From Tubulanus polymorphus (lineage: Eukaryota > Animalia > Nemertea), in assembly GCF_964204645.1 (NCBI RefSeq), contig NC_134033.1, positions 2,562,131 to 2,626,130 of the forward strand: DNA of 64,000 nt. Direction: 5' to 3'. Under the pieces are notes generated by a model. That model was not told the DNA's origin, did not search any database, and saw nothing but the letters and a program-made list of their open reading frames with translations. Of the stretch, positions 38,060-64,000 are shown piece by piece (position 1 is the first letter of the stretch; each line of letters starts with the position of its first letter). The translations under genes were made by a program, and so were the position numbers.

Positions 38060-38297
38060 GGTAATGATAAACTCGACGCTATATCGGTTACTAAAACAGG
38101 TGGCGAAGGAAGAAAACTTCGAGTAATATCCCGAACGCTCGTGAGATTTGTATATGGATGAGAAATCGATGAATTCTTAGAATTCAACCGTGATTAAGGT
38201 GTTCATAAACGCATTAATTTCTCTAAAGTATTGTTCCTGTATCCGCTGGGAAGCGCGTTCAACTTTCTGACAATCATTTTACTGATAAAGTGTCGCA
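38060..38297 (+). pseudogene. Degenerate 5' fragment (leader to TM1) of an array GPCR
   Basis: 38229-38297 (gtattgttcctgtatccgctgggaagcgcgttcaactttctgacaatcattttactgataaagtgtcgca) matches TM1 of the array genes. The upstream leader is homologous but disrupted, and the sequence then jumps into spacer DNA. Confidence 0.85.
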
Positions 38298-39317
38298 CAC
38301 GTTAAAACCAACCTTTCACGGACACCAACTCAAAAAAAAATCAAACGAAATCGACTAATCAAATAAATTACGGGGTCAATCCCTATTTTAAGTTAAAGAA
38401 AAAACTAACCTTTCGTTTTTACTGCGAATTAGAAAATACGGCTTCAACGAAAAACCACGTTAAAAACAAAAAGACCACGTCACAACGAAGTTCTTTCTTT
38501 AAATCATATATGTCATAAGTAGCGATTGACCCTGAAGTTCATTCAATAGATAGATTTCGTTTAATTTGTTTCGATTTGATCGTTGTCCCTTACAAACCCA
38601 CGACGCCTACCGGGATCGGACACAGGCGGTTTTCATTTTGATTTGAAATCACGAATCGAAGTACAGATATAGTTTGCGTGATCGGCGGTCGAATTTACAG
38701 AATCGTTTTTGTTACATGTTTTTTTGAAGTACGTATCTGGAACTGGTTGTAACGTGGCTCAAGACGAAAAGTGTAAAATGTAGAAAAGAAAATAGTCATA
38801 TTGTGTCATTTAAATAGTTTCATATCTTTATTTCAATGCGGCCCGAATTAGCTAAGATACATGTCGCTTAGTTGCGAGAGATTCACACGGTTAAAATTTA
38901 CCAAAGTGTCGTCAAAATCGATTATAGGACCGATCAAATATGAATAAACACATGGCTCATCCAACCGGACGAAAAGTATCCTAACAAAATGGCGGCTAGC
39001 AACTTTAAAATGGTTACTAAAACTTACATTCAAAGCGCGCTCGTTCTCTGCGTTCTCAGTTCGTCTGTAATGTGCCTACCGCTGCATTGAGCCGACAGAT
39101 TCGAAGCGCGTTCAACTACCATGTACGGAAAAGAAAAAAAAACAGGGAGTGTCAATCTAGAGAGCTTACCGGCAGTCTGACGTGAGAGAGACAGACAGAG
39201 AGAGGGGAGAGAGAGGGAGGAGAGATATCGTAAACTCGATGCTACTGAACTGGCTCAGTTTGTGCGAAGGAGGAAAACTTCAGGTTATCGCTCAAACGCT
39301 CGTGAGATTTATGTACG

Positions 39318-40541
39318 ATGAGAAACTTGACGCTGCCGTCGTTACCAACGCCCCCTGCAACACGGCCGCTACCTGCGTCGCCACCTCAGTTTATCAGGGC
39401 TTTCTTACATTTTCTCCATGAATACAATGTTGTATGGCGCGTTAAAATCGCTGAAGTATTGTTCCTGTATCCGCTGGGAAGCGCGTTCAACTTTCTGACA
39501 ATCATTTTACTGATAAACTGTCGCAGATTTCAGTCGGTTCGTTACACGTTCCCCTATCTCATAACACTGGCGTTTTCGGATCAACTTGTCGTGTTGTTTG
39601 GTTTAAGGAAATTCGCTAACACCATTGTGTCAACCCTAACAGATGGATTAGGATATCATCCGGAATGTAAAAGTTGGACTCTACATGGGCGTCAAAAGGG
39701 CGTCGCATCATGTCCATCGATTTATTATTATTGGCATTATTTCTATCGTGTAATAGAACGGAATACTCCGGTTTGTTACATCGAGTATTTGTTCAATGAT
39801 CAAGCGATCACTGTGTCTAATTATATCATTGTTGTGATTTCTATCGAGAGATTTGTCTCCGTTCGTTTTCCTTTTTTCCATATGAAATATTTCACCGTTA
39901 CTCGACGTAGATTCGCCGTAATAATTGTAGTCGTTTCTGCAACAATTTTGAACTTGGATCTGCCGATATTTAATCGAATTAGGTTACCGAAAAGGCGTAA
40001 TGGTGGCTACCACGAGTTCTACTGTAGTTCGTATAGTTATCGTGACAACACTGTCATGGTACGCACATACAGATCTGTTGCGGTATTTATTCGGGATATA
40101 GTCCCGGTTTTGATTGTAGTAACAACATCAGTGGCAACTGCTAGAATTCGCCGTGGAGGTAAAACACGTATTGGCGCCTCAGTCGGCAACAGTCGTCATA
40201 AAACTGAAACCAGTAAAACACTTCTACTAATAGTTCTTGTTTATCTGGTACTAGTAATGCCATACGCTATATGCGACTGTACGGACAAGTTGGCCAGTGT
40301 GGTGTCCTCGTTAGTGCGTCGAATTAATGGCTTTGAAATCACTATCGGAGAAACCCCCATCATTGTCTTCTTTGTTAGGATACTGTGGAATATATTTGCC
40401 CGGATATTAACGTTTCCTCGACAGTGCGTTTTCTGTGTGAATTTCTTTATATACGTAACAACGCTGAGAGTTTTCCGACGCAAACTTGTCGGTGTTTTCC
40501 GCTGTAACTGTCGCCGAACGATTCCGAGTCAGTCCCAGTAG
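39318..40541 (+). CDS. Intronless class A GPCR, copy 1 (407 aa; FMRFamide-receptor/Srw-like, putative chemoreceptor)
   Basis: Seven hydrophobic segments; TM2 LAFSD, TM3 SIERFVSVRFP, TM5 DIVP, TM6 VMPY, TM7 NFFIY. Confidence 0.92.
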   Translation: MRNLTLPSLPTPPATRPLPASPPQFIRAFLHFLHEYNVVWRVKIAEVLFLYPLGSAFNFLTIILLINCRRFQSVRYTFPYLITLAFSDQLVVLFGLRKFANTIVSTLTDGLGYHPECKSWTLHGRQKGVASCPSIYYYWHYFYRVIERNTPVCYIEYLFNDQAITVSNYIIVVISIERFVSVRFPFFHMKYFTVTRRRFAVIIVVVSATILNLDLPIFNRIRLPKRRNGGYHEFYCSSYSYRDNTVMVRTYRSVAVFIRDIVPVLIVVTTSVATARIRRGGKTRIGASVGNSRHKTETSKTLLLIVLVYLVLVMPYAICDCTDKLASVVSSLVRRINGFEITIGETPIIVFFVRILWNIFARILTFPRQCVFCVNFFIYVTTLRVFRRKLVGVFRCNCRRTIPSQSQ

Positions 40542-43328: not shown

Positions 43329-44573
43329 ATGAGAAATTTTACGCTGTCGCCACTACCGCAGCTTCTACCGACACGGCAGCTACTACCGACACGACAGCTA
43401 CTACCGACACGGCCGCCACCTTCGCTGCCAATGCCGCAGTTTATCAGGGCTTTCAATAAATTTCTCTACGAAAACAATGTTTTTATGCGCGTTGATATCG
43501 CTGAAGTATTGTTCCTGTATCCGTTGGGAAGCGCGTTCAACTTTCTGTCGATCATTTTACTGATGAAGTGTCGCAGATTTCAGTCAGTTCGTTACACGTT
43601 CCCTTATCTCATAACTATAGCGTTTTCGGATCAACTTGTCGTATTGTTTGGTTTAAGGAAATTCGCGAACACCATTGTGTCAATCCTAACCCGTGGATTA
43701 GGATACTATCCGGAATGTAAAAGTTGGACACTACTTGGGCGTCAAAAGGGCATTGCATCATGTCCATCGATTTATTATTATTGGCATTATTTCTATCGTG
43801 TAATTGAACGGTATACTCCGGTTTGTTACATCGATAATTTGTTCAATAATCAAGCGATCACTGTGTCTAATTATATCATCGTTGTGATTTCTATCGAGAG
43901 ATTTGTCTCCGTTCGTTTTCCTTTTCTTCACATGCAACATTTCACAGGAACTCGACGTAGATTCGCCATAATAATTGTAGTCGTTTTTGCCTTCATTTTA
44001 AACTTGGATTTACCGATATTTAATCGAATTAGGTTATCAAAGATTGGCTTATACTTATGTAGTTATAATAATCCCGACAACACTCTCATGGTTCAAACAT
44101 ACAGATCTGTTGCGGTATTTATTCGGGATATAGTCCCGGCTTTAATTGTATTAACAACATCAGTGGCAACTGCTAGAATTCGCCGGGGAGGTAAAACACG
44201 TATTGGTGCCTCAGTCGGCAACAGTCGTCATAAAACTGAAACCAGTAAAACACTTCTACTAATAGTTCTTGTTTATCTGTTACTAGTAATGCCATACGCT
44301 ACATGTGACTGTACGGACAAGTTGAGCAGTTTGGTGCCCTTGTTGGTGCGTCGAATAAATGGCTTCAAAATCACTTTTAGAAAAACCCCCATCATTTTCT
44401 TCTTTGTTAGGATACTGTGGAATATATTAGCCCGGATATTAACGCTTCCTCGACAGTGCGTTTTCTGCGTGAATTTCTTTATATACGTAACAACGCTGAA
44501 AGTTTTCCGACACAAACTTGTCGGTGTTTTCCGCTGTAACTGTCGCCGAACGGTTCAGAGTCAGTCCCTGTAG
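43329..44573 (+). CDS. Class A GPCR, copy 2 (414 aa)
   Basis: Paralog of copy 1 with the same motifs; N-terminal LLPTR(Q) x3. Confidence 0.92.
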   Translation: MRNFTLSPLPQLLPTRQLLPTRQLLPTRPPPSLPMPQFIRAFNKFLYENNVFMRVDIAEVLFLYPLGSAFNFLSIILLMKCRRFQSVRYTFPYLITIAFSDQLVVLFGLRKFANTIVSILTRGLGYYPECKSWTLLGRQKGIASCPSIYYYWHYFYRVIERYTPVCYIDNLFNNQAITVSNYIIVVISIERFVSVRFPFLHMQHFTGTRRRFAIIIVVVFAFILNLDLPIFNRIRLSKIGLYLCSYNNPDNTLMVQTYRSVAVFIRDIVPALIVLTTSVATARIRRGGKTRIGASVGNSRHKTETSKTLLLIVLVYLLLVMPYATCDCTDKLSSLVPLLVRRINGFKITFRKTPIIFFFVRILWNILARILTLPRQCVFCVNFFIYVTTLKVFRHKLVGVFRCNCRRTVQSQSL

Positions 44574-45010: not shown

Positions 45011-46527
45011 CTCTTATTTGAAATAAAACGTTATTAATATCGCTAAAACTGTACCATTTAATCAATTCTCTTCACTTGATATTAATGTTGTTGAAGCTTT
45101 AAACAAGAAAACTAACTAACTCAGTTTATTGAAGCCTTCAACGATAAAATGCATTGCTTAATATTGTCGAAAATGAATTACTGAGCGTTTTTGTTAAAAA
45201 CAGGGCGGATTTGACGAAAATATGGTCAATATACCAGGTCTAAACCGCATCTGCGGTGCATATCGCATTCAGATTTCACTGGTCACATTTTGGTAGTAAA
45301 TGTATATCGACAATTTAATGTTGTCCTAATTGCGATCGAAATCCATTTTAAAGAAGACATAAAAATTCATCAGATAGAAAATAATATTCGGGCCACATTC
45401 AACAAGATACGACGCTCGATAATCACTAATCATTTTTTTTTTACATTTTTACACTATTCGTTTTAACGCCACGTTACAACCAACCTTTCGGGGAGACCAA
45501 CTCAAAAAATCAAACGAAATCATTGACCAATCAAATAAATTATAGGGTCAATCCGTATTTTAATATATAGAAAGAATTAGCCTTTCGTTTTTACTGCGAA
45601 TCAGCAAATATGGTTTCAACAAAAAAAAAGCAGGTTAAACCCGAAAAGACCACGTTACAACGAACAACTGATCTTTCTTAAAATTTTTAAGTAGTGATTG
45701 ACCCTGAAGTTCATTTAAATGATAGATTTCGCTTGATTTGTTTCGATTTGATCGGTGTCCCTTACAGACCAAACCACCACACCTGCCGGGATCGAAACAG
45801 GGGGTTCGAATTAGAAATCAGCAATCGAAGTACAGATATAGTTGGCGATATATATCCGATCGGTTGTCGGATCTACAGATTTTTTTTGGTCTAAATCGAA
45901 GTACGTAATTGGAACTGGTTTAAACATGGCTCAAAACGAGAAAAATGTGGCGTTATGGCGGCTAGGAACTTTAAAACGGTTACTGAATCTTACATTCAAC
46001 GCGCGCTCTTTCAGTTACTTGTTACTTTCTTGGCCATATCTCTGTAAACTAGCCGCCAATAGATTTGTTGCGAAGTTAGACATTTTTCGCGAAATGGATC
46101 CTCGGACAAACTGGTGGTTCAAAGAGTTTCCGATTGCGACAACAAGAAACTAGGGTTTGGATTTTGAAAATCGATCGAAAATCGAAGCACGGATAGCTGG
46201 ATGTTTTAGCATTGGTTCTAGACTGGATATTCATAGTTAGGCTGCAGCTTTAGTAGTGATTTTTGCGCGTGATTTCAAAAATAATACACGACGAGAAATA
46301 TGTTCACAGTTCGTCTGTAATGTGCGTATTGCTGCATAAAGCCGACAGATTCGAAGCGCATTCAACAACCACGTACAGAAAAAACAGGGAGTGTCAATCT
46401 GAAGAGCTTACCAGAGGAGAGAGGCAGGAGTGATATCGTAAACTCGATGTTACATAGAACTGAATCAGTTGACGCGAAGGAGGAAAACTTCAAGTTAATT
46501 CTCAAGCGCTCGTGAGATTAATTTACG

Positions 46528-47739
46528 ATGAGAAATTTAACCCTAACCCCGCTACCTCCGCCACGTCCAGTTCCACTGCTGCAGTTTATCCGGGCGTTCG
46601 CGCAATTTTTCCGTGATAACGGTGTTTATAGACGCATGGATTTCGCTAAAGCATTGTTCCTGTATCCGCTGGGAAGCGTGTTCAACTTTCTGACAATCAT
46701 TTTACTGATAAAGTGTCGCAAATATCAGTCGGTTCGTTACACGTTCCCCTATCTCATAACACTAGCGTTTTCGGATCAACTTGTCGTGTTGTTTGGTTTA
46801 AGAACATTCGCTGTAACCATCAGGACATTTGTTATCTACGAATTAGGATATTATCCGGAATGTAAGAGTCGGATGGTGTTTGAAAGTAAAGAGGCAAGTG
46901 CATTATGTCCATTGATTTACTATTACTGGTATTATTTCTATAGTGTAATAGAACGGAATATTCCGATATGTTACATCGAGAATTTGTTCAATAATCAAGC
47001 GATCACTGTGTCTAATTATATCATTGTTGTGATTTCTATCGAGAGATTTGTCTCCGTTCGTTTTCCATTTTTTCACATGAAAAATTTCACCGCAACTAAC
47101 CGTAGATATGCCCTAATAATTGTGGTCGTTTTTGCAATCATTTTGAACTTAGATCTACCGATATTCAATAGAATTAGGTTAGTAAAAACAATTTATGGTG
47201 GCTACGATGTGTTCTCCTGTAGTCATAGTAGTTTTAATTTCGACATCATTGTCGTGATTCGTACATACAGATCTGTTGCGGTATTTATTCGGGATATAGT
47301 CCCGGTTTTGATTGTAGTAACGACATCAGTAGCAACTGCTACAATTCGCCGGGGAGGTAAAACACGTATTGGCGCCTCAGTCGGCAACAGTCGTCATAAA
47401 ACTGAAACCAGTAAAACACTTCTACTAATAGTTCTTGTTTATCTGGTACTAGTAATGCCATACGCTATATGTGAATGTTGGAACAATTTGTTCCATTTGG
47501 TGTTCTCGTTATCGATTATGATTAATCGCTTCGTAATCACTCCTACAGAAAACCCCATCATTTTCTTCTTTGTTTTAACGTTGTGGAACACATTATCCAA
47601 TATGTTAACACTTCCTCGACAGTGCGTTTTCTGCCTGAATTTCTTTATATACGTAACAACGCTGAGAGTTTTCCGACACAAACTTGTCGGTGTTTTCCGC
47701 TGTAGTCCGCTTGTCAGTCCCAGTAGCTCAGTGGGTTAA
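46528..47739 (+). CDS. Class A GPCR, copy 3 (403 aa; most divergent)
   Basis: Same TM motifs; distinct N-terminus, ECL1, ECL2 and ECL3. Confidence 0.92.
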   Translation: MRNLTLTPLPPPRPVPLLQFIRAFAQFFRDNGVYRRMDFAKALFLYPLGSVFNFLTIILLIKCRKYQSVRYTFPYLITLAFSDQLVVLFGLRTFAVTIRTFVIYELGYYPECKSRMVFESKEASALCPLIYYYWYYFYSVIERNIPICYIENLFNNQAITVSNYIIVVISIERFVSVRFPFFHMKNFTATNRRYALIIVVVFAIILNLDLPIFNRIRLVKTIYGGYDVFSCSHSSFNFDIIVVIRTYRSVAVFIRDIVPVLIVVTTSVATATIRRGGKTRIGASVGNSRHKTETSKTLLLIVLVYLVLVMPYAICECWNNLFHLVFSLSIMINRFVITPTENPIIFFFVLTLWNTLSNMLTLPRQCVFCLNFFIYVTTLRVFRHKLVGVFRCSPLVSPSSSVG

Positions 47740-48964: not shown

Positions 48965-49037
48965 GCCTCCAAAGCTCAGGGGTTAGAGCACTGGTCTTGT
49001 AAACCTGGGGTCGAGAGTTCAAATCTCTCTGGGGGCA
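48965..49037 (+). tRNA. tRNA-Thr(TGT) copy, probable pseudogene
   Basis: Same cloverleaf, but the invariant U8 is A and the anticodon stem has a T:T mismatch (ACCTG). Confidence 0.75.
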
Positions 49038-49621
49038 TGGCTGCAATTTTTTTCGCGAAATGGATCCTCGGACGCTGGTGATTCAAAAAAAACTAGGGGT
49101 TTGATTTGTAAAACCTATCGGAAATCGAAGCACGGACAGTTGGATTGATTGGTTCTGGATATTCAAAGTTAAGCTGCAGCTTTAGTAGTGAATATATATA
49201 GTTTAAATTCCTCTCATATTGTCGCATCAAACCACGAAATAGAACATGTTATATGTATATACATATTTCTGCGCGTGATTTCAAAAAAGATTCACGACGA
49301 GAAATATGTTCACAGTTCGTCTGTAATTTGCATGTTGCTGCATAAAGCCGACAGATTCGAAGCGCGTTCAACAACCATGTACGGAAAAAACAGGGAGTGT
49401 CAATTTAGAGAGCTTACCGGCAGTCTGACGTAAGGGAGTGAGAGAGGGAGGAGAGAGGAAGTAGAGAGTTGGAGAGAGAGAGGGAAAGAGAGAGGAAGGA
49501 GAGAGAGATGGCAGAGTGAGGGAGAGATATCGTAAACTCGATGATACGTAGAACTGAATCCGTTGACGCGAAGGAGGAAAACTTCAGGTTATTTCTCAAA
49601 CGCTCGTGAGATTTATATACG

Positions 49622-52528: not shown

Positions 52529-54554
52529 TCAGTGGGATAAGGCGAGATGCATTCACTATCAGTGTTGAGCGGTATCGGGTTCGAGTCCTGCTGCCTGCTT
52601 ATAGTGTGTGCGGGCTTCGAGTCCTGCTGGCTGCTTATAGAGTGTGCGGGCAACACTTCGCGGACCTTGGTCCCGTCGGAATAGAATCTCGGGGGGGGGG
52701 GGCAGTCTTGGGAAAACCAATCCGGTGTTGAATCACAAATCCAGCTTCCCATCCTAATGTAAACGATAGTAATAATTAACCCAACAGGGTTAGTGTGGTG
52801 AAATTAAGATCCAACTGACGTAAAGCGCTGAGTTACAAGCAGGTTCTAGTCCTGCTGGCTGTGTACAGTGTACGGGGCCTTAATCCCATCCTGAAGGTAA
52901 ACCGTGTTAAATGAACCCAACAGGGTTAGTATGTGGTGAAACCAAGATCCAACTCTAAAGCAAGATAAACTCTTATTTGAAATAAAACGTTATTAATATC
53001 GCTAAAACTGTACCATTTAATCAATTCTCTTCACTTGATATTAATGTTGTTGAAGCTTTAAACAAGAAAACTAACTAGCTCAGTTTATTGAAGCCTTGAA
53101 CGATAAAATGCATTGCTTAATATTGTCGAAAATGAATTACTGAGCGTTTTTGTTAAAAACAGGGCGGATTTGACGAAAATATGGTCAATATACCAGGTCT
53201 AAACCGCATCTGCGGTGCATATCGCATTCAGATTTCGATGGTCACATTTAGGTAGTGAATTTATATCGACAATTCAATGTTGTCCTAATTGCGATCGAAA
53301 TTCATTTTAAAGAAGACATAAAAATTCATCAGATAGAAAATAATATTCGGGCCACATTCAACAAGATACGACGCTCGATAATCACTAATCATTTTTTTTT
53401 TTACATTTTTACACTATTCGTTTTAACGCCACGTTACAACCAACCTTTCGGGGAGACCAACTCAAAAAAATCAAACGAAATCATCGACCAATCAAATAAA
53501 TTATAGGGTCAATCCGTATTTTAATATATAGAAAGAATTAGCCTTTCGTTTTTACTGCGAATCAGCAAATATGGTTTCAACAAAACAAAAACAAGTTAAA
53601 CCCGAAAAGACCACGTTACAACGAACAACTGATCTTTCTTAAAATTTTTAAGTAGTGATTGACCCTGAAGTTCATTTAATTGATAGATTTCGCTTGATTT
53701 GTTTCGATTTGATCGGTGTCCCTTACAGACCCACCCACGACACCTGCCGGGAACGAAACAGGGGGTTCGAATTAGAAATCAGCAATCGAAGTACAGATAT
53801 AGTTGGCGATATATATCCGATCGGTTGTCGGATTTACAGAATTTTTTCGTTTAAATCGGAGTTCGTAATTGGAACTGGTTTAAACATGGCTCAAAACGAG
53901 AAAAATGTGGCGTTATGGCGGCTAGAAACTTTAAAACGGTTACTGAATCTTACATTCAACGCGCGCTCTTTCAGTTACTTTTTACTTTCTTGGTCATATC
54001 TCTGTAAACTAGCTGTCAATAAATTTGTTGCGAAGTTAGACATTTTTCGCGAAATGGATCCTCGGACACACTGGTGATTCAAAGAGTTTCCGATTGCGAC
54101 AACAAGAAACTAGGGTTTGGATTTTGAAAATCGATCGGAAATCGAAGCACGGATAGCTGGACGTTTTAGCATTGGTTCTGGATATTCAAAGTTATGCTGC
54201 AGCTTTAGTAGTGAATATATATAGTTTAAATTCCTTTCATATTGTCGCATCAAACCACGAAATAGAACATGTTATATGTATATACATATTTCTGCGCGTG
54301 ATTTCAAAAATAATACACGACGAGAAATATGTTCACAGTTCGTCTGTAATTTGCATGTTGCTGCATAAAGCCGACAGATTCGAAGCGCGTTCGACAACCA
54401 TGTACGGAAAAAAACAGGGAGTGTCAATCTAAAGAGCTTACCGGCAGTCTGACGTGAGGGAATGAGAGAGGGAGGAGAGATATTGTAAACTCGATGCTAC
54501 GTAGAACTGAATCAGTTGACGCGAAGGAGGAAAACAAGTGATTTCTCAAACGCG

Positions 54555-55754
54555 ATGAGAAACTTTACGCTACCGACGCGGCCGCCACCTCCGACACCGC
54601 CGCCGTTTATCATGGCTTTCGTATATTTTCTCAACGAATACAATGTTGTATGGCGCGTTAAAAACGCTGAAGTATTGTTCCTGTATCCGCTGGGAAGCGT
54701 GTTCAACTTTCTGACGATCATTTTACTGATAAAGTGTCGCAGATTTCAGTCAGTTCGTTACACGTTCCCCTATCTCATAACTATAGCGTTTTCGGATCAA
54801 CTTGTCGTATTGTTTGGTTTAAGATCATTCGCCGACACCATCGTGTTATCCATTACCCGTGGATTAGGATACTATCCGGAATGCAAGAGTTGGACTCTAC
54901 TTGGGCGTCAAAAGGGCATCGCATCATGTCCATCGATTTACTATTATTGGCATTATTTCTATCGTGTAATTGAACGGAATACTCCGGTTTGTTACATCGA
55001 TAATTTGTTCAATAATCAAGCGATCACTGTGTCTAATTATATCATTGTTGTGATTTCTATTGAGAGATTTGTCTCCGTTCGTTTTCCTTTTTTTCACATG
55101 CAACATTTCACAGAAACTCGCCGTAGATTCGCCATCCTAATTGTGATCGTTTTTGCGACCGTTTTGAACTTGGATCTGCCGATAATATATCGAATTAGGT
55201 TAATAAAAAGGAATGATGGTGGCTTCTATGAGTTCTACTGTAGTTATAATGATCCTGACATTATTTTAACGGTTCAAACATACAGATCTGTTGCGGTATT
55301 TATTCGGGATATAGTCCCGGCTTTCATTGTAGTAACAACATCAGTGGCAACTGCTAGAATTCGCCGGGGAGGTAAAACACGTATTGGCGCCTCAGTCGGC
55401 AACAGTCGTCATAAAACTGAAACCAGTAAAACACTTCTACTAATAGTTCTTGTTTATCTGGTACTAGTAATGCCATACGCTATATGTGACTGTACGAACA
55501 AGTTGGGCAGTTTGGTGTCCTTGTTAGTGCAGAGAATTAATGGCTCCAAAACCAATCGTAGAGAAACCCCCATCATTCGATTCTTTGTTAGGATGCTGTG
55601 GAATATATTAGCCCGGATATTAACGTTTCCTCGACAGTGCGTTTTCAGCGTGAATTTCTTTATATACGTAACAACACAGAGAGTTTTCCGACGCAAACTT
55701 GTCGGTGTTTTCCGCTGCACCTGTCGGCGAACGGTTCCGAGTCAGTCCCAGTAG
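54555..55754 (+). CDS. Class A GPCR, copy 6 (399 aa)
   Basis: ATG homologous to the other copies (MRNFT); full 7TM frame. Confidence 0.92.
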   Translation: MRNFTLPTRPPPPTPPPFIMAFVYFLNEYNVVWRVKNAEVLFLYPLGSVFNFLTIILLIKCRRFQSVRYTFPYLITIAFSDQLVVLFGLRSFADTIVLSITRGLGYYPECKSWTLLGRQKGIASCPSIYYYWHYFYRVIERNTPVCYIDNLFNNQAITVSNYIIVVISIERFVSVRFPFFHMQHFTETRRRFAILIVIVFATVLNLDLPIIYRIRLIKRNDGGFYEFYCSYNDPDIILTVQTYRSVAVFIRDIVPAFIVVTTSVATARIRRGGKTRIGASVGNSRHKTETSKTLLLIVLVYLVLVMPYAICDCTNKLGSLVSLLVQRINGSKTNRRETPIIRFFVRMLWNILARILTFPRQCVFSVNFFIYVTTQRVFRRKLVGVFRCTCRRTVPSQSQ

Positions 55755-57805
55755 TCAGTGGGATAAGGCGAGATGCATTCACTATCAGTGTTGAACGGCA
55801 TCGGGTTCGAGTCCTACTGCCTGCTTATAGCGTGTGCGGGCTTCGAGTCCTGCTGGCTGCTCATAGAGTGTGCGGGCAACACTTCGCAGACCTTGGTCCC
55901 GTCGGGATAGAATCTCGGGGGGGGGGGGGCAGTCTTGGGAAAACCAATCCGGTGTTGAATCACAAATCAAGCTTCCCATCCTAATGTAAACGATGGTAAT
56001 AATTAACCCAACAGGGTTAGTGTCGTGAAATTAAGATCCAACTGACGTAAAGCGCTGAGTTACAAGCAGGTTCTAGTCCTGCTGGCTGTGTACAGTGTAC
56101 GGGGCCTTAATCCCATCCTGAAGGTAAACCGTGTTAAATGAACCCAACAGGGTTAGTATGTGGTGAAACCAAGATCCAACTCTAAAGCAAGACAAACACT
56201 AATTTGAAATAAAACGTTATCAATATCACTAAAACTGTACCATTTAATCAATTCTCTTCACTTGATATTAATGTTGTTGAAGCTTTAAACAAGAAAACTA
56301 ACTAACTCAGTTTATTGAAGCCTTAAACGATAAAATGCATTGCTTTATATTGTCGATAATGAATAACTGAGCGTTTGTGTTAAAACAGGGGGATTAAACG
56401 AATATGATACCAGGACTCAACTACATCGGCGGTGCATGTCGTATTCAGATTTCACACTGGTTGCATTTTGGTAGTAAATTTATATCGAATATTCAATTCA
56501 ATGTTGTCCTAATTGCGATCGAAATTCATCTTAAAGAGAACATAAAAATTCATCAGAAAGACAATAAGATTCGGGCCATATTAAATAAGATACGACACTC
56601 GACCTTCACTAATCTTTTTTTTTACATTTTTACACTATTCGTTTTAACGCCACGTTAAAACCACCAACCTTTCGAGGAGACCAACTCAAACAAAAACAAA
56701 CAAACGAAATCGACCGATCAAGTTATAGGGTCAATCCGTATTTTCAGATGAAGAAAATTCTAACCTATCGTTTTTTACTGCGAATTAAGAAAATATCGTT
56801 TCAATAAAAAAAACCAGGTTAAACCCGAAAAGACCACGTTACAACGAACAACTGATCTTTCTTAAAATCTTAAAGTAGTGATGAACCCTGATGTTCATTT
56901 AATTAGGTAGATTTCACTTGATTTGTTTCGATTTGATCAGTGTCCCTTACAGACCCACCCACGACAACTGCCGGGAACGAAACAGGGGGTTCGAATTAGA
57001 AATCAGCAAAGCAATCGAAGTGCAGATATAGTTGGCGATATATATCCGATCGGTTGTCGGATTTACAGATTTTTTTCGTTTAAATCGGAGTTCGTAATTG
57101 GAACTGGTTTAAACATGGCTCAAAACGAGAAAAAATGTGGCGTCATGGCGGCTAGAAACTTTAAAACGGTTACTAAATCTTACATTCAACGAGCGCTCTT
57201 TCAGTTACTTTTTACTTACTTGGCCATATCTCTGTAAACTAACTGTCGATAAATTTGTAGCGAAGGTAGACATTTTTCGCGAAATGGATCCTCGGACACA
57301 CTGGTGGTTCAAAGAGTTTTCGATTGCGACAACAAGAAACTAAGGTTTGGATTTTGAAAATCGATCGGAAATCGAAGCACGGATAGCTGGACGTTTTAGC
57401 ATCGGTTCTGGATATTCAAAGTTATGCTGCAGCTTTAGTAGTGAATATATATAGTTTAAATTCCTTTCATATTGTCGCATCAAACCACGAAATAGAACAT
57501 GTTATATGTATATACATATTTCTGCGCGTGATTTCAAAAATAATACACGACGAGAAATATGTTCACAGTTCGTCTGTAATTTGCATGTTGCTGCATAAAG
57601 CCGACAGATTCGAAGCGCGTTCAACAACCATGTACGGAAAAAACAGGGAGTGTCAATCTAAAGAGCTTACCGGCAGTCTGACGTGAGGGAATGAGAGAGG
57701 GAGGAGAGATATTGTAAACTCGATGTTACGTAGAACTGAATCCGTTGACGCAAAGGAAGAAAACTTCAAGTTATTTCTCAAACGCTCGTGAGAGATTTAT
57801 ATACG

Positions 57806-59062
57806 ATGAGAAATTTTACGCTGCAGCCGCTACCGCAGCTACTACCGACACGACAGCTACTACCGACACGACAGCTACTACCGACACGGCAACCACCTTC
57901 GCTGCCGCCGCCGTTTATCAGGGCTTTCGATAAATTTCTCAACGAATACAATGTTTTAATACGCGTTGATATCGCCGAAGTATTGTTCCTGTATCCGTTA
58001 GGAAGCGTGTTCAACTTTCTGACAATCATTTTACTGATAAAGTGTCGCAGATATCAGTCAGTTCGTTACACGTTCCCCTATCTCATAACACTAGCGTTTT
58101 CGGATCAACTTGTCGTGTTGTTTGGTTTAAGATCATTCGCTCACACCATTGTGTTAAACATAACCCGTGGATTAGGATACTATCCGGAATGTAAAAGTTG
58201 GACACTACTTTTGCGTCAAAAGGGCGTCGCATCATGTCCATCGATTTACTATTATTGGCATTATTTCTATCGTGTAATTGAACGGTATACTCCGGTTTGT
58301 TACATCGATAATTTGTTCAAAAATCAAGCGATCACTGTGTCTAATTATATCATTGTTGTGATTTCTATCGAGAGATTTGTCTCCGTTCGTTTTCCTTTTT
58401 TTCACATGCAACATTTCACAGAAACACGACGTAGATTCGCCGTAATAATTGTAGTCGCTTTTGCCTTCATTTTAAACTTGGATTTACCGATGTTTAATCG
58501 AATTAGGTTATCAAAGATTGGCTTATACTTATGTAGGTATAATAATCCCGACAACACTCTCATGGTTCAAACATACAGATCTGTTGCGGTATTTATTCGG
58601 GATATAGTCCCGGCTTTGATTGTAGTAATAACATCAGTGGCAACTGCTAGAATTCGCCGGGGAGGTAAAACACGTATTGGCGCCTCAGTCGGCAACAGTC
58701 GTCATAAAACTGAAACCAGTAAAACACTTCTACTAATAGTTCTTGTTTATCTGTTACTAGTAATGCCATACGCTATATGTGACTGTACGAACAAGTTGAG
58801 CAGTTTGGTGTCCTCGTTAGTGTATAGAATTAATGGCTTTGAAATCACTTTTAGAACAACCCCGATCATTTTCTTCTTTGTTAGGATGCTGTGGGATATA
58901 TTAGCCCAGATATTAACGCTTCCTCGACAGTGCGTTTTCTGCGTGAATTTCTTTATATACGTAACAACGCTGAGAGTTTTTCGACGCAAACTTGTCGGTG
59001 TTTTCCGCTGTAACTGTCGCCGAACGATTCTGAGTCAGTCCCGCGGTAGCTCAGCGGGATAA
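57806..59062 (+). CDS. Class A GPCR, copy 7 (418 aa)
   Basis: ATG MRNFT at 57806; full 7TM frame. Confidence 0.92.
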   Translation: MRNFTLQPLPQLLPTRQLLPTRQLLPTRQPPSLPPPFIRAFDKFLNEYNVLIRVDIAEVLFLYPLGSVFNFLTIILLIKCRRYQSVRYTFPYLITLAFSDQLVVLFGLRSFAHTIVLNITRGLGYYPECKSWTLLLRQKGVASCPSIYYYWHYFYRVIERYTPVCYIDNLFKNQAITVSNYIIVVISIERFVSVRFPFFHMQHFTETRRRFAVIIVVAFAFILNLDLPMFNRIRLSKIGLYLCRYNNPDNTLMVQTYRSVAVFIRDIVPALIVVITSVATARIRRGGKTRIGASVGNSRHKTETSKTLLLIVLVYLLLVMPYAICDCTNKLSSLVSSLVYRINGFEITFRTTPIIFFFVRMLWDILAQILTLPRQCVFCVNFFIYVTTLRVFRRKLVGVFRCNCRRTILSQSRGSSAG

Positions 59063-60372
59063 GGCGACGATTCCCTTAAAAAGTCCTAAGCTTTGTTCGT
59101 ATATGGACGATTCCACACTCTGTAGGAAGGTCGAAACATTGTCTCTGTTTCATTACAAGTTAGAAGAAATATTTCCATTTAAAAAGCGAGCGTGAAGTAA
59201 AAAATGCAGTGAAAACAACATTTGCCGGTCAAAAATGGTTGCGCTTTAAAACAAACAGAAATCCTACTTACCAAACAATGATTATTGCCAACGACCTTCA
59301 GACTTCTGTGCGCACTTCCTTTTATGGTTTCCAGATTCAGTTGATGAGATAATCCCGAGTCTAATTTCCTCAAGTTATGGATGGAAAACGTTAGCGAACT
59401 TTAAAAATGTATATTCCGATAAGGTAACTCGCTTGTCGTGTGGACTGAAGACCGCGGGAACAACATTGAATAACACCGCGTCAAAATAACTATATTCGAA
59501 ATTGAGAACACTGAAATTGTAGGCGTGATTCAAGAAGTCGTCAGTTGTTTTCAATCGCTCTCATGTCGCGTAGTTGCAAATTAGCGAAATGAATTTCATC
59601 TCCCTGAAAACTAGACATTAACGCGATTTTGAATGCGACCAGTTTGAAAATAGTTTTAAAAATCGATCTCGGGACCTATGAAATATAAATAAACACGTGG
59701 TACAAATATTTTCTCAAAAGAAACGGCACAACAAACAGGGTCTTGTTCGACAGTCATGAGTAAGAGTTAACTCTGAGTTAAAATCAGTTCATTTTCAATG
59801 AGTTAACTCTGAGTCAGGTACTGAATCCAGGACAGAAGTACCCTAACAAAATGGCGGCTAGTAATTGGTTACTAAAACTTATATCCAATGCGCGCTCATT
59901 CAAATACTTTTTCCTTACTTGGCTATCTCTATCTAAACTGTCTGTACATTTGTTGCGAGCGTCAATTTTATTTCAAAACACCATATTATACGTTTTAGGA
60001 AGGACAGTGTTCTGTGTCGTGGTTCGTGTAGTTGAATGCAGCGGTGAAGGATATATGAGGGACTGGTACAAAGTGACCGGTCACCTGTTTATTGTAATAA
60101 TGCGACAAACACGACCGAGCATCTGGCGAAACGTCCAGTGTGGCGAAAACGCGGCCGATTTTAAAAATCGCGAAAACATCTCTAAAAATTGTCAAGTCAG
60201 ATTATCGAATCAAATAAACAAAGTTCTACAAGATTATTCTCAATATTTCAGGTATATTGATTATAAATCAATTTTCAACCACGTGTGACCGTTATAACGA
60301 CAGTTGGGATAACATCAATCACGACAGATCATTCAGATGTCACCCGATGCCTCGAAGCGAAATTGATGACAA

Positions 60373-60445
60373 GCCTCCATAGCTGAGGGGTTAGAGTACT
60401 GGTCTTGTAAACCGGGGGTCGAGAGTTTAAATCTCTCTGTGGGAA
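60373..60445 (+). pseudogene. tRNA-Thr(TGT) pseudogene
   Basis: Homologous to 42644-42716 with damaged D-stem, T-loop (TTT for TTC) and acceptor stem, and no T-run terminator. Confidence 0.8.
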
Positions 60446-60487
60446 TTTGTTTAGACTGGTGGTTCAAAGAGTTGTCGATTGCGGGAA

Positions 60488-60550
60488 TGAACGCTAGGGG
60501 TCGACTGTGAACGCTAGGGGTCGACTGTGAACGCTAGGGGTCGACTGTGA
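60488..60550. repeat. 20-bp tandem repeat x3 (tgaacgctaggggtcgactg)
   Basis: Directly visible. Confidence 0.9.
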
Positions 60551-60612
60551 AAATCGAAGTGCGTATAGCGAGAAGCTATACGTATAAAGTGATGATGTAG
60601 GTTTAATGGTGA

Positions 60613-60789
<177 letters not shown>

Positions 60790-61072
60790 ACATATAGTTA
60801 AATTCCTCTCATATTGTCGCATGTATATACATATATCTGCGTGTGATTTAAAAAACAAAATACACGACGAGAAATATGTTCACCGTTCGTCTGTAATTTG
60901 CATGTTGCTGCATAAAGCCGACAGATTCGAAGTGCATTTAACTACCATGTACGGGAAAAACAGGGAGTGTCAATCTAAAGAGCTTATCGGTGGAGAGATA
61001 TCGTAAACTCGATGCTACGTAGAACTGAATCAGTTGATGCGAAGGAGGAAAACAAGTTATTTCTCAAACGCG

Positions 61073-62293
61073 ATGAGAAACTTTACGCTACCGACGCGGC
61101 CGCCACATCCGCCACGGCCACAATCGCCGCCGTTTATCAGGGCTTTCGTACATTTTCTCAACGAATACAATGTTGTATGGCGCGTTAAAATCGCTGAAGT
61201 ATTATTAATATATCCACTGGGAAGCGTGTTTAACTTTCTGACGATCATTTTACTGATAGTGTGTCGCAGATTTCAGTCAGTTCGTTACACAATCCCCTAT
61301 CTCATAACTCTCGCGTTTTCGGATCAACTTGTCGTATTGTTTGGTTTACGATCATTTGCTCACATCATCGTGTTAACCATAACAGATGGATTAGGATATC
61401 ATCCGGATTGTAAAAGTTGGACTCTATTTGGGCGTCAAAAGGGCGTCGCATCATGTCCATCGATTTACTATTATTGGCATTATTTCTATCGAGTAATTGA
61501 ACGGTATACTCCAGTTTGTTACATCGATAATTTGTTCAATAATCAAGCGATCACTGTGTCTAATTATATCATTGTTGTGATTTCTATCGAGAGATTTGTC
61601 TCCGTTCGTTTTCCTTTTTTTCACATGCAACATTTCACAGTAACTCGCCGCAGATTCGCCATCATAATTGTGATCGTTTTTGCGACCGTTTTGAACTTGG
61701 ATCTGCCGATACTATATCGGATTAGGTTAATAAAAAGGAATGATGGTGGCTTCTATGAGTTCTACTGTAGTTATAATGATCCTGACATTATTTTAATGAA
61801 ACAAACATACAGATCTGTCGCGGTATTTATTCGGGATATAGTCCCGGCTTTGATTGTAGTAATAACATCAGTGGCAACTGCTAGAATTCGCCGGGGAGGT
61901 AAAACACGTATTGGCGCCTCAGTCGGCAACAGTCGTCATAAAACTGAAACCAGTAAAACACTTCTACTAATAGTTCTTGTTTATCTGGTACTAGTAATGC
62001 CATACGCTATATGTGACTGTACGGACAAGTTGGCCAGTTTGGTGTCCTTGTTAGTGCAGAGAATTAATGGCTCCAAAACCAATCGTAGAGAAACCCCCAT
62101 CATTCGATTCTTTGTTAGGATGCTGTGGAATATATTAGCCCGGATATTAACGCTTCCTCGACAGTGCGTTTTCTGCGTGAATTTCTTTATATACGTAACA
62201 ACGCTGAAAGTTTTCCGACACAAACTTGTCGGTGTTTTCCGCTGTAACTGTCGCCGAACGATTCCGAGTCAGTCCCATTTGTCAGTGGGATAA
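61073..62293 (+). CDS. Class A GPCR, copy 8 (406 aa; alternative in-frame ATG at 61037)
   Basis: Full 7TM frame; ECL2 and ECL3 are shared with copy 6. Confidence 0.92.
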   Translation: MRNFTLPTRPPHPPRPQSPPFIRAFVHFLNEYNVVWRVKIAEVLLIYPLGSVFNFLTIILLIVCRRFQSVRYTIPYLITLAFSDQLVVLFGLRSFAHIIVLTITDGLGYHPDCKSWTLFGRQKGVASCPSIYYYWHYFYRVIERYTPVCYIDNLFNNQAITVSNYIIVVISIERFVSVRFPFFHMQHFTVTRRRFAIIIVIVFATVLNLDLPILYRIRLIKRNDGGFYEFYCSYNDPDIILMKQTYRSVAVFIRDIVPALIVVITSVATARIRRGGKTRIGASVGNSRHKTETSKTLLLIVLVYLVLVMPYAICDCTDKLASLVSLLVQRINGSKTNRRETPIIRFFVRMLWNILARILTLPRQCVFCVNFFIYVTTLKVFRHKLVGVFRCNCRRTIPSQSHLSVG

Positions 62294-62619
62294 GGCGAGA
62301 TGCATTCACTATCAGTGTTGAGCGGTATCGGGTTCGAGTCCTGCTGCCTGCTTATAGCGTGTGCGGGCTTCGAGTCCTGCTGGCTGCTTATTGTGTGCGG
62401 GCAACACTTCGCAGACCTTGGTCCCGTCGGGTTATAATCCCGTGGGGTAAGCATTGGGAAAACTAATTCAGTGCTGAGTTACAAGCTGGTTCTAGTCCTG
62501 CTGGCTGTGTACAGTGTACGGGGCCTTAATCCCATCCTGAAGGTGAAACCATGATAAATGGATAACCCAACAGGGTTAGTATGTTGTGAAACCAAGATCC
62601 AACTGACGTAAAGCAAGAT

Positions 62620-64000
62620 AAACTCTCATTACAAATCAAACGTTATTAATATCACTAAAACTGTACCATTTAATCGATTCTCTTCACTTGATATCAATGT
62701 TGTTGAAGCTTTAAACAAGAAAACTAACTAACTCAGTTTATTGAAGCCTTGAACGATAAAATACATTGCTTTATATTGTCGAAAATGAATAACTGAACGT
62801 TTGTGTTAAAACAGGGGGATTAAACGAAAATGATACCAGGACTCAACTACATCGGCGGTGCATGTCGTATTCAGATTTCACACTGGTTGCATTTTGGTAG
62901 TAAATTTATATCGAATATTCAATTCAATGTTGTCCTTATTGCGATCGAAATTCATCTTAAAGAGAACATAAAAATTCATCAGAAAGACAATAAGATTCGG
63001 GCCATATTAAAAAAGATACGACACTCGATATTCACTAATCTTTTTTTTACATTTTTACACTATTCGTTTTAACGCTGCGTTAAAACCAAACTTTCGGCGA
63101 GACCAACTCAAAAAAAAAAATCAAACCAAATCGACCAATCAAAAAAATTATAGGGTCAATCCGTAATTTCAGATAAAGAAAATTCTAACCTATCGTTTTT
63201 TACTGCGAATTAAGCAAATATGGTTTCAATAAAAAAAAACAGGTTAAACCCGAAAAGACCACGTTACAACGAACAACTGATCTTTCTTAAAATCTTAAAG
63301 CAGTCATTGACCCTGAAGTTCATTTAATAGGTAGATTTCGCTTAATTTGTTTCGATTTGATCAGTGTCCCTTACAGACCCATCCACCACACCTGCCGGGA
63401 TCGAAACAAGGGGTTCGAATTAGCAATCGAAGTACAGATATAGTTGGCGATATATATCCGATCGGTTGTCGGATTTACAGAATTTTTTCGTTTAAATCGA
63501 AGTACGTAATTGGAACTGGTTTACATGGCTCAAAACGAGAAAAATGTGGCGTTATGGCGGCTAGAAACTTTAAAACGGTTACTAAATCTTACATTCAACG
63601 AGCGCTCTTTCAGTTACTTGTTACTTACTTGGCCATATCTCTGTAAACTAGCTGTCAATAAATTTGTTGCGAAGTTAGACATTTTTGCGCGAAATGGATC
63701 CTCGGACACATTGGTGGTTCAAAGAGTTTTCGATTGCGACAACGAGAAACTAGGGTTTCGATTTTGAAAATCGATCGGAAACCGAAGCACGGATAGCTGG
63801 ATGTTTTAGCATTGGTTCTGGATATTCAAAGTTATGCCGCGGCTTTAGTAGTGAATACATATAGTTTGAGTTCATCTCATATTGTCGCATCAAACCACGA
63901 AATAGAATATGCATACATGTTACATGTATATACATATTTCTGCGCGTGATTTCAAAAATAATACACGACGAGAAATATGTTCACAGTTCGTCTGTAATTT
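62620..64000 (+). repeat. GPCR array spacer unit; implies a further copy just beyond the window
   Basis: Collinear with 56200-57580; the window ends ~200-300 bp before the expected ATG position. Confidence 0.85.

What the first reader, a model, noticed from the sequence alone, without database searches (positions are those of the whole stretch)
38060..64000. Tandem GPCR array with shuffled extracellular segments on a near-invariant signalling core
Seen: TM3-ICL2 (…SIERFVSVRFPF) and ICL3 (RRGGKTRIGASVGNSRHKTETSKTLLL) are almost identical even at silent sites, while extracellular parts fall into discrete types that assort independently. ECL2 RLSKIGLYLC is in copies 2/4/7, RLIKRNDGGFYEFYC in 6/8, HEFYCS in 1/5. 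ECL1 TDGLGYHP is in 1/8 and TRGLGYYP in 2/4/6/7. TM2 end RKFANTIVS is in 1/2/4 and RSFA.(T/I)IVL in 6/7/8. N-terminal EYNVVWRVK is in 1/6/8 and LLPTRQ repeats in 2/4/7. No single tree fits these patterns. Inference: gene conversion or unequal crossover recombines ligand-contact modules into a combinatorial receptor repertoire (chemosensory or non-self recognition). ERF, NFxxY and lack of introns fit the FMRFamide-receptor/Srw-like expansions known in invertebrates.
Basis: partly seen in the sequence, partly recalled or inferred. Interest (0 to 1): 0.8.

Follow-up and report, generated by a model that had tools for sequence, protein, structure and literature searches.

The report
Mosaic tandem array of orphan GPCRs
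A ribbon-worm chromosome carries a long tandem run of single-exon receptor genes whose inner signalling parts are kept almost letter-identical by copying between neighbours, while the outward-facing parts stay different and have been swapped between copies. This is a clear example of a known way in which sensor gene families evolve.

Summary
Window 38.1-64 kb holds eight + strand copies of an intronless rhodopsin-class GPCR gene. Five are intact in their canonical frame (c1, c2, c3, c6, c7, c8 minus none: six intact in fact), one is frameshifted (c4) and one is a 3' fragment (c5). A ninth copy starts at the window's end.

The array runs about 111 kb in total, with 17 distinct copies. A 51-kb higher-order unit is repeated at 99.91% identity. 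The genome is almost certainly Tubulanus polymorphus (Nemertea).

Silent-site diversity is 0.03-0.08 in two core blocks (TM3-ICL2 and TM5-ICL3-TM6). It is 0.16-0.30 in the extracellular-half segments. Against paralogues on another chromosome the core's silent sites diverge freely (0.35-0.47). So the invariance comes from homogenisation within the array, not from constraint on the nucleotides.

Recombination is supported by a PHI test, decay of linkage with distance, GENECONV-like tracts, a GARD-like scan and AU tests. Breakpoints fall at the borders between variable and constant blocks. The flanking DNA is mosaic too.

Positive selection is not shown: pN/pS is at most about 1. Srw/FMRFamide-receptor membership is not supported. 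Chemosensory function is only inferred.

This is a new member of a known kind: lineage-specific GPCR arrays of nemerteans, and regional gene conversion as in protocadherin and odorant-receptor clusters. Two earlier notes of this scan on neighbouring and other DNA of the same genome reached the same reading.

The parts
38165..38296 (+). Short N-terminal fragment of a family member at the left edge of the array
   Evidence: tblastn with copy 8: residues 22-65, 54.5% identity; blastn 38210-38297
39318..40541 (+). Copy 1, intact intronless GPCR gene, 407 aa
   Evidence: ORF; Pfam 7tm_1 at 53.6 bits. Its N-terminal 130 nt are identical to copy 16 outside the window
43329..44573 (+). Copy 2, intact, 414 aa, with three LLPTRQ repeats
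46528..47739 (+). Copy 3, intact, 403 aa. It is the most divergent copy in the window (82-86% nt identity), yet its core blocks are 96-97% identical to the others
49622..50865 (+). Copy 4. A 1-nt deletion in the third LLPTRQ repeat (about 49687/49688) puts the canonical ATG out of frame. The body ORF stays open, with an in-frame internal ATG at 49723
51998..52528 (+). Copy 5, a 3' fragment only (ECL2 to the stop). Nearly identical to fragment c11 beyond the window
54555..55754 (+). Copy 6, intact, 399 aa
57806..59062 (+). Copy 7, intact, 418 aa, with three LLPTRQ repeats (an 18-nt coding minisatellite at 57836-57888)
61073..62293 (+). Copy 8, intact, 406 aa. Used as the reference for numbering and as the first sequence for the structure model
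63923..64000 (+). Conserved upstream element of copy 9. Copy 9's coding sequence (frameshifted) lies just beyond the window
61916..61987 (+). Longest invariant run in the seven full-length window copies: 72 nt, CDS nt 844-915 of copy 8, in ICL3 and the start of TM6
46259..64000 (+). The window's share of a 51,043-bp higher-order unit of 15 gene copies, repeated in tandem at 99.912% identity

Best explanation
The region is the left part of a tandem array of about 111 kb. The array belongs to a lineage-specific, single-exon, rhodopsin-class (class A) GPCR family in a nemertean genome, almost certainly Tubulanus polymorphus. It grew by repeated unequal crossover, both of units of about 3.2-4 kb and, very recently, of a 51-kb unit.

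Germline interlocus gene conversion and unequal crossover between the copies keep two blocks nearly identical across all copies, silent sites and pseudogenes included. These blocks are TM3-ICL2 and TM5-ICL3-TM6. The four segments of the extracellular half escape homogenisation and remain old and divergent. They are the N-terminus, TM2 top plus ECL1, TM4 plus ECL2, and TM6 top plus ECL3 plus TM7 top.

Exchanges start and end in the conserved blocks. The divergent segments and the flanking DNA are therefore passed between copies as cassettes, which gives mosaic genes. Shown here: the recombination, the homogenisation and the module borders.

Inferred only:
- The long identical blocks favour further exchange, so the pattern reinforces itself.
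- Selection for different ligand specificity protects the outward-facing segments.
- The receptors sense external chemicals and share one intracellular partner.
For: Anatomy:
- Eight copies lie in the window and 17 distinct copies in the array: 12 intact, 3 frameshifted, 2 fragments.
- Pfam gives 7tm_1. The AF2 model has seven TM helices plus H8, and the fold matches peptide and chemokine class-A receptors.

Homogenisation:
- pS is 0.034-0.075 in the core blocks against 0.16-0.30 in the variable segments within the array. Against paralogues on contig C7 the core pS is 0.35-0.47.
- The minimum-pS window has permutation p = 1e-4.
- Frameshifted copies and fragments share the same core.

Recombination:
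- PHI gives z = -15.6 for 15 copies and p = 0.001 for the window's 7 copies.
- r2 decays with distance, p = 0.0005.
- Twelve pairs have matching tracts at the minimum permutation p, for example c1-c16 at nt 6-135 and c6-c8 at nt 963-1080.
- Each variable segment rejects the trees of the other segments and the whole-gene tree, AU p < 0.005.
- The GARD-like scan places breakpoints at CDS nt about 112, 443, 751, 931 and 1081, with AICc gains of 60-310. These lie at or near the borders between variable and constant blocks of the model.
- All six partitions reject the whole-gene topology at an equal number of parameters.
- Downstream flanks fall into types that cut across the CDS groups.

Lineage:
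- The LGR ORF's best hit is an NCBI T. polymorphus protein on a contig of exactly C9's length.
- More than 100 family matches occur genome-wide, in several arrays.
- No outside relative scores better than E = 5e-15 among 1.84 billion representatives.
- Nemertean class-A lineage-specific expansions in tandem arrays are described in PMC11886862.
Against: - GC3 is not raised in the homogenised blocks (0.29-0.37 against 0.38-0.50 elsewhere). The GC-biased-conversion signature used for protocadherins is therefore absent.
- pN/pS does not exceed 1 significantly anywhere (ECL3 1.05, CI 0.68-1.64). Selection for diversity is not shown, and relaxed constraint would fit as well.
- With the window's seven copies alone the per-partition topology tests are weak.
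- No reads, population data, expression data or ligand data were available.
- The 51-kb duplicate could be an assembly duplication.
Confidence: 0.8

Rival explanations
1. Assembly artefact. The mosaic copies would be chimeras made by mis-joining haplotypes or collapsed repeats, and the 51-kb repeat would be a false duplication.
For: Tandem arrays with 3-kb units and blocks of near-identity are hard to assemble. The 51-kb unit recurs at 99.912% identity, close to a plausible level of heterozygosity.
Against: - The same mosaic copies appear in both 51-kb units, which differ by 13 mismatches and 3 indels. The mosaics were therefore assembled twice from different molecules, whichever way the duplication is read.
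- Copies differ by 2-17%, enough to be told apart by accurate long reads.
- Linkage decay and tract statistics are what germline exchange predicts.
Confidence: 0.05
2. No recombination. The invariant core would reflect constraint on the nucleotide sequence (an embedded RNA or regulatory element) or a mutational cold spot. The shared extracellular motifs would be convergent or due to rate differences.
For: The core is also the most conserved part at the protein level across the wider family. Against C7 paralogues the core's pS is somewhat lower than in the variable segments (0.35-0.47 against 0.52-0.58).
Against: - Silent sites in the core do diverge to 0.35-0.47 against paralogues on another chromosome.
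- ICL3 differs in protein sequence in those paralogues.
- Rfam finds no RNA family in the genes.
- Topological incongruence is significant at an equal number of parameters.
- Identical tracts of 100-130 nt include many silent sites.
Confidence: 0.04
3. A dedicated diversification system. The constant blocks would be selected recombination joints that generate new receptor combinations at a high programmed rate, possibly somatically, for non-self recognition.
For: The cassette-like layout with breakpoints at module borders. Fourteen distinct module combinations occur in 15 copies.
Against: - Nothing beyond ordinary homologous exchange is needed to explain the data.
- No recombination signal sequences, and no neighbouring recombinase or deaminase genes, were seen in the window's ORFs.
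- Three frameshifted copies and two fragments fit passive birth-and-death evolution.
- Positive selection is not shown.
Confidence: 0.03

Closest known systems
Lineage-specific expansions of class-A GPCRs in Lophotrochozoa, including Nemertea (PMC11886862)
   Same: Single-exon class-A receptors in tandem arrays, with no one-to-one orthologues in other species. Pseudogenes and truncated copies sit among intact ones. They are taken to be candidate chemosensory receptors.
   Different: That paper holds no mention of gene conversion or recombination and did not include Tubulanus. Here the within-array mosaic and the silent-site homogenisation are measured.
Regional gene conversion in clustered protocadherin genes (PMC1852091; Noonan et al. 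2004, as cited there)
   Same: Tandem paralogues in which one part of the coding exon is homogenised to near-identity, silent sites included, while the recognition part stays divergent. The argument from silent sites is the same.
   Different: A different protein family: cadherin ectodomains rather than a 7TM receptor. There is one homogenised 3' region rather than two or more internal blocks alternating with four variable segments. GC3 is raised in the converted protocadherin regions but not here.
Vertebrate odorant, vomeronasal and taste receptor clusters, and CCR2/CCR5 (review PMC1995454; PMC2942037; PMC8877049)
   Same: Tandem arrays of intronless GPCR genes that expand by unequal crossover, with gene conversion and recombination producing mosaic receptor sequences and pseudogenes.
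   Different: No sequence relationship beyond class A. The alternation of homogenised intracellular blocks and divergent extracellular blocks is unusually regular here.
Mosaic divergence of tandem paralogues by interlocus gene conversion (model and HMA4 case, bioRxiv 10.1101/2025.10.29.685298)
   Same: Effective conversion rates vary along the gene, which gives a mosaic of homogenised and diverged stretches.
   Different: Three plant metal-pump copies against 17 or more receptor copies. No population data are available here.
Nematode Srw / FMRFamide-receptor-like chemoreceptors
   Same: Class-A fold, large lineage-specific tandem expansions, and feature-based look-alikes in the ESM Atlas.
   Different: No Pfam Srw match. 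The family has its own hallmarks: a long ECL1 of about 40 residues with two extra invariant cysteines, ERF for DRY, and NFFIY for NPxxY.

Membership tests
Rhodopsin-class (class A) GPCR, Pfam 7tm_1 | Pfam PF00001 match above the gathering score | tested here: met
   41.7-53.7 bits against a cut-off of 30.5 for copies 1, 3 and 8. The match covers TM3-TM6/7 only
Rhodopsin-class (class A) GPCR, Pfam 7tm_1 | Seven transmembrane helices plus helix 8, with a fold like solved class-A receptors | tested here: met
   AF2 model, pLDDT 72.4, helices as listed. Foldseek probability 1.00, TM-score 0.5-0.75 by target, to CCR5, CCK1R, opioid, FPR2 and NMU receptors
Rhodopsin-class (class A) GPCR, Pfam 7tm_1 | E/DRY at the end of TM3 and the TM3-ECL2 disulfide cysteines | tested here: met
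   E173-R174-F, and C149 and C232, are invariant in 18 family members. The third position is F, not Y
Rhodopsin-class (class A) GPCR, Pfam 7tm_1 | NPxxY in TM7 and CWxP in TM6 | tested here: not met
   N370-F371-F372-I-Y374 has no proline at 7.50. TM6 has (M/L)P with no tryptophan. This is a divergent class-A subfamily rather than a non-member
Nematode-type Srw / FMRFamide-receptor-like | Match to Pfam 7TM_GPCR_Srw (PF10324), or clear sequence kinship to FMRFamide receptors | tested here: not met
   No Srw hit at E <= 10; only a sub-threshold Srx hit (E 0.008, 16 bits). The best outside hits of the family profile are at E 5e-15 to 1e-11 and, where named, are GPR139-like (Lingula) or unnamed GPCRs
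Lophotrochozoan lineage-specific class-A GPCR expansion | Tandem clustering of many paralogues | tested here: met
   17 distinct copies in 57 kb, repeated to about 111 kb. Further arrays lie on C5, C6, C7, C8, C12 and C33, with at least 104 matches
Lophotrochozoan lineage-specific class-A GPCR expansion | No close orthologues in other species | tested here: met
   Profile search of 1.84 billion representatives: none at E <= 1e-30 and 8 at E <= 1e-10. Caveat: records of the window's own genome appear to be withheld from the libraries, and no other palaeonemertean proteome may be present
Regional interlocus gene conversion (mosaic concerted evolution) | Silent-site homogenisation confined to part of the gene, and absent against unlinked paralogues | tested here: met
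Regional interlocus gene conversion (mosaic concerted evolution) | Significant phylogenetic incongruence between segments, and identifiable shared tracts | tested here: met
Regional interlocus gene conversion (mosaic concerted evolution) | Raised GC3 in converted regions (GC-biased conversion) | tested here: not met
   GC3 is 0.29 (TM5-ICL3-TM6) and 0.37 (TM3 block), against 0.38-0.50 elsewhere. This is not a universal feature of conversion
Chemosensory receptor | Expression in sensory cells and response to external ligands | not testable with these tools
   No expression or ligand data. Inference from family dynamics only

The most novel reading that the evidence does not exclude
The alternation of long, letter-identical blocks with divergent ligand-facing cassettes might not be a passive by-product. 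It might be a selected germline cassette-shuffling architecture: the constant blocks would serve as recombination joints that let a ribbon worm generate and test new combinations of four extracellular modules much faster than point mutation could. In the extreme version the exchange would also occur somatically.
Probability: 0.05. Interest if true: 0.8.

Novelty: new member of a known kind. Interest (0 to 1): 0.35.

Why it matters
This is a clean, quantifiable invertebrate example of partial concerted evolution in a receptor array. The intracellular coupling face is homogenised, down to silent sites and pseudogenes. The extracellular half is kept divergent and is exchanged between copies.

It also shows that trees built from whole genes of such lineage-specific expansions will mislead. 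Nemertean GPCR expansions, so far only counted, have an internal recombination dynamic like that of vertebrate protocadherin and odorant-receptor clusters.

The family has its own hallmarks: a long, cysteine-braced ECL1, ERF for DRY, and NFFIY for NPxxY. It has no close relatives in public protein sets, so it is a candidate for deorphanisation.

It does not reveal a new mechanism.

Tried and rejected
- Word-index protein search with copy 8: no hit.
- PDB sequence search: no hit.
- ESM Atlas features: only generic class-A look-alikes.
- Pfam Srw: no match.
- GC3 test for biased conversion: negative.
- pN/pS above 1 in extracellular segments: not significant. PAML/HyPhy site models were not available and would in any case need partition-specific trees.
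- Rfam scan for an embedded RNA that might explain the invariant nucleotides: only three spacer tRNAs.
- Nucleotide-level constraint: rejected by the comparison with C7 paralogues.
- I first guessed a cnidarian, from the galaxin-like ORF and the genome size. One search corrected this to Nemertea.
- I first took c1 and c2 for a third copy of the higher-order unit. They are not: c1 against c16 is 92.5% identical, and c2 against c17 is 97%.
Full report
**What is there**

ORF listing shows a run of + strand ORFs of 400-424 aa from 39.3 kb to the window's end. Each carries a Pfam 7tm_1 match above the gathering score. Self-comparison shows a tandem repeat with units of about 3.2-4 kb and two alternating spacer types.

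Taking the conserved MRN(F/L)TL start as the initiation codon, the window holds the following copies:
- c1: 39318-40541
- c2: 43329-44573
- c3: 46528-47739
- c4: 49622-50865
- c5: 51998-52528
- c6: 54555-55754
- c7: 57806-59062
- c8: 61073-62293

There is also a short N-terminal fragment at 38165-38296, and the upstream element of a ninth copy at 63923-64000.

Copy 5 is only a 3' fragment that begins in ECL2. Copy 4 has a 1-nt deletion in the third of its 18-nt LLPTRQ repeats, at about 49687/49688. This puts the canonical ATG out of frame with the otherwise open body. The coding sequences have no introns.

**The array is much larger than the window**

The window is C9:2562131-2626130 of a 267.8-Mb assembly. 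I fetched 100 kb beyond the window. The array runs from about 38.2 kb to about 149.5 kb in extended coordinates.

It holds 17 distinct copies: 12 intact, 3 frameshifted (c4, c9, c14) and 2 3' fragments (c5, c11). A 51,043-bp unit of 15 copies, starting at window 46259, is repeated in tandem at 99.912% identity, with 13 mismatches and 3 gaps.

At least 104 family matches occur genome-wide, in further arrays on C5, C6, C7, C8, C12 and C33.

**Organism**

The neighbouring LGR-type ORF (15202-18405, minus strand; LDLa, LRR and 7TM domains) has as its best hit an NCBI protein of Tubulanus polymorphus. That protein lies on a contig of 16,481,795 bp, exactly the length of C9. T. polymorphus is a palaeonemertean ribbon worm. 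Flow-cytometry genome sizes of 313-358 Mb (PMC8468679) are compatible with the assembly.

**Checking the observation**

The N-terminal partition {1,6,8 | 2,4,7} and the TM2-end partition {1,2,4 | 6,7,8} give all four combinations, so they cannot sit on one tree without homoplasy.

The nucleotide alignment shows two blocks with almost no differences, even against the divergent copy 3. Nucleotide diversity ranges from 0.016 to 0.24 along the gene.

Synonymous diversity among 15 full-length copies is 0.00-0.07 over codons 249-308, and 0.02-0.09 over codons 153-176. It is 0.2-0.45 in the variable stretches. The lowest 60-codon pS window (0.040, codons 254-313) was not reached in 10,000 codon permutations. 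The seven full-length window copies share a 72-nt invariant run in ICL3 and the start of TM6.

**Topology of the receptor**

I built an AF2 model of copy 8 from an alignment of 18 family members (A1). Its mean pLDDT is 72.4. The elements, in copy-8 residue numbers, are:
- TM1 34-66
- TM2 74-106
- ECL1 107-147, long, with short helices
- TM3 148-179
- TM4 190-214
- ECL2 215-236, with a hairpin
- TM5 237-275
- ICL3 276-288
- TM6 289-332
- ECL3 333-341
- TM7 342-377
- H8 379-389

The variable stretches are codons 1-43, 93-128, 189-248 and 321-356. They correspond to the N-terminus, the top of TM2 with ECL1, TM4 with ECL2 and the top of TM5, and the tops of TM6 and TM7 with ECL3.

Foldseek places the model among peptide, chemokine and opioid class-A receptors, with none specifically close.

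**Why the core is invariant**

Across family members at 35-65% identity from other chromosomes, the intracellular half is the most conserved part at the protein level. Examples are KCRRYQSVRYTFPYLITLAFSDQ, ERFVS(I/V)RFPFFHM, ASKTLL and NFFIY. ICL3 itself is not conserved in those members.

The decisive control is silent sites.
- Within the array, pS is 0.034 (TM5-ICL3-TM6) and 0.075 (TM3-ICL2), against 0.16-0.30 in the variable segments.
- Against two paralogues on contig C7, the same blocks have pS of 0.35 and 0.47, against 0.52-0.58 in the variable segments.

So the nucleotides of the core are free to change. They are alike within the array because they are copied between its members. Frameshifted copies and fragments carry the same core, only 1-5% from the consensus. 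This fits copying rather than selection on each copy.

GC3 is not raised in the homogenised blocks. The GC-bias signature used for protocadherins (PMC1852091) is therefore absent.

**Recombination tests**

- PHI: observed 0.355 against 0.460 ± 0.007 for 15 copies (z = -15.6). For the seven window copies z = -3.8 and p = 0.001.
- Squared correlation between informative sites falls from 0.245 at up to 50 nt to 0.115 beyond 800 nt (permutation p = 0.0005).
- A GENECONV-like permutation of polymorphic sites finds 12 pairs at the minimum attainable p. Examples are c1-c16, identical over nt 6-135 (63 polymorphic sites) while differing at 84 sites elsewhere; c4/c17-c16 over nt 309-418; and c6-c8 over nt 963-1080.
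- Maximum-likelihood trees of the four variable segments differ. Each segment rejects the trees of the other three and the whole-gene tree (AU p < 0.005).
- A greedy GARD-like scan places breakpoints at CDS nt about 112, 443, 751, 931 and 1081, with AICc gains of 310, 100, 73, 73 and 60. These lie at or near the borders between variable and constant blocks.
- I refitted the whole-gene topology to each of the six partitions with free branch lengths, so that the number of parameters is equal. Every partition rejects it with 15 copies (AU p 0.028 to 7e-6, summed ΔlnL 215). With the seven window copies alone the signal is weak (p 0.04-0.27, summed ΔlnL 28.9).

A nearest-neighbour table makes the mosaics concrete. 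For copy 7 the nearest copies are c4 (N-terminus), c16 (ECL1), c10 (ECL2), c5/c11 (ECL3) and c12 (C-terminus). The downstream flanks fall into types {c2,c4,c6,c14,c16,c17,(c8)}, {c3,c7,c9,c12,c13} and {c1,c15}. These cut across the CDS groups, so crossovers as well as short conversion tracts are involved.

The 'discrete types' picture is only partly right. At 94% identity many segments are singletons, although 14 different module combinations occur in 15 copies.

**Selection**

pN/pS is 0.50-0.59 in three extracellular-half segments. It is 1.05 (bootstrap CI 0.68-1.64) around ECL3, and about 0.3 in TM1-TM2 and TM3. Positive selection is therefore not shown. Relaxed constraint, or a mixture of the two, fits equally well.

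**Could it be an assembly artefact?**

No reads were available. However, both 51-kb units contain the same mosaic copies, and the units differ by 13 substitutions and 3 indels. The mosaics were thus assembled from two different sets of molecules, whether the duplication is real or represents two haplotypes. This makes chimeric assembly of the genes unlikely. Whether the 51-kb duplication itself is real stays open.

**Relatives and family membership**

Copy 8 finds nothing in the word-index protein search and nothing among PDB sequences. A profile of 18 family members, searched against 1.84 billion representatives, finds no protein at E <= 1e-30. The best E-value is 5e-15, and matches cover TM3-TM7 only. 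The named ones among the best hits are GPR139-like proteins of Lingula and unnamed GPCRs of Globodera.

Records of the window's own genome seem to be left out of these libraries. The result therefore says the family lacks close relatives in other sequenced species. It does not say the family is unannotated.

The family's own hallmarks are four invariant extracellular cysteines (C113 and C128 in ECL1, C149 in TM3, C232 in ECL2), ERF, NFFIY without the TM7 proline, and no TM6 tryptophan.

**Comparison with what is known**

- Large lineage-specific, tandemly arranged class-A GPCR expansions are reported for nemerteans, for example about 2,352 class-A genes in Notospermus geniculatus. They are read as candidate chemoreceptors. 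That paper holds no mention of gene conversion or recombination (PMC11886862).
- Mosaic receptor sequences made by gene conversion and recombination are a stated principle of vertebrate OR, V1R and V2R evolution (PMC1995454).
- Regionally confined homogenisation, argued from silent sites, is well described for clustered protocadherins (PMC1852091).
- A general model of mosaic divergence by interlocus conversion exists (bioRxiv 10.1101/2025.10.29.685298).
- In corals, gene conversion among tandem duplicates was judged rare (PMC10236652).

The present locus is therefore a new, well-resolved member of a known kind, not a new kind.

**Earlier notes of this scan**

After my own tests I found two earlier notes in this scan. 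Note s1-500305 covers the adjacent window, which is the continuation of this same array. Note s1-516488 covers another array in the same genome. Both were read by follow-up agents as mosaic orphan GPCR arrays shaped by ordinary germline recombination, which agrees with my result.

**Verdict**

The functional part and the family-name part are not. Interest is moderate to low (0.35).

Noticed in passing
window 42644-42716, 48965-49037, 60373-60445 (+): Three tRNA-Thr(TGT) genes sit in one of the two spacer types of the GPCR array, so tRNA genes have been amplified along with the receptor units (Rfam 44-64 bits; ARAGORN).
   Followed up: partly
window 46259-64000 and beyond (extended coordinates 46259-97300 against 97193-148204): A 51,043-bp higher-order unit of 15 receptor genes is repeated in tandem at 99.912% identity. 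It is either a very recent segmental duplication or an assembly duplication of haplotypes.
   Followed up: partly
window 57836-57888, 43360-43420, 49650-49700: An 18-nt coding minisatellite (QLLPTR) in the N-terminal tails of copies 2, 4, 7, 10 and 17, with 3-4 repeats. Copy 4's frameshift is a 1-nt deletion inside it.
   Followed up: yes
window 60821-60910 (and upstream of each copy) against 22109-22196 (-): A conserved element of about 90 nt, 160-250 nt upstream of each array gene, recurs at 91% identity upstream of the unrelated CUB-domain ORF at 20374-21627 (-), in the same relative orientation. A spacer segment (62865-63428) also matches 22897-23452 (-).
   Followed up: no
window 15202-18405 (-), 18562-19926 (-), 20374-21627 (-): A 1067-aa single ORF encodes a GRL101-like LGR receptor (four LDLa repeats, LRRs, 7TM). 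Upstream on the same strand lie a CUB-domain ORF (20374-21627) and an ORF with no Pfam match (18562-19926). They may be exons of one large receptor gene.
   Followed up: partly
window 10609-11307 (-): An ORF with galaxin-like cysteine repeats (Pfam PF24748, 68.8 bits).
   Followed up: no
window 50914-50989, 52576-52651, 55802-55877, 62329-62402: A 36-nt unit repeated about twice lies just 3' of the stop codon in one class of downstream flank. It marks that flank type.
   Followed up: no
window 36000-36865; 60613-60787; 23364-23945, 27694-29510: Three kinds of simple or tandem repeat lie around the array: a 50-nt tandem repeat (17.5 copies) just left of it; an (AT)87 tract in the spacer before copy 8; and long tandem repeats that read as NPHNCGTGFR-type peptide repeats in ORFs on both strands, which are probably non-coding satellites.
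   Followed up: no
G000:C33 (loci L023-L025): A small contig carries at least three or four further copies of the same subfamily. They resemble c13 and are 72-73% identical to copy 8. Two of them give identical scores 36 kb apart, which hints at another higher-order duplication.
   Followed up: no
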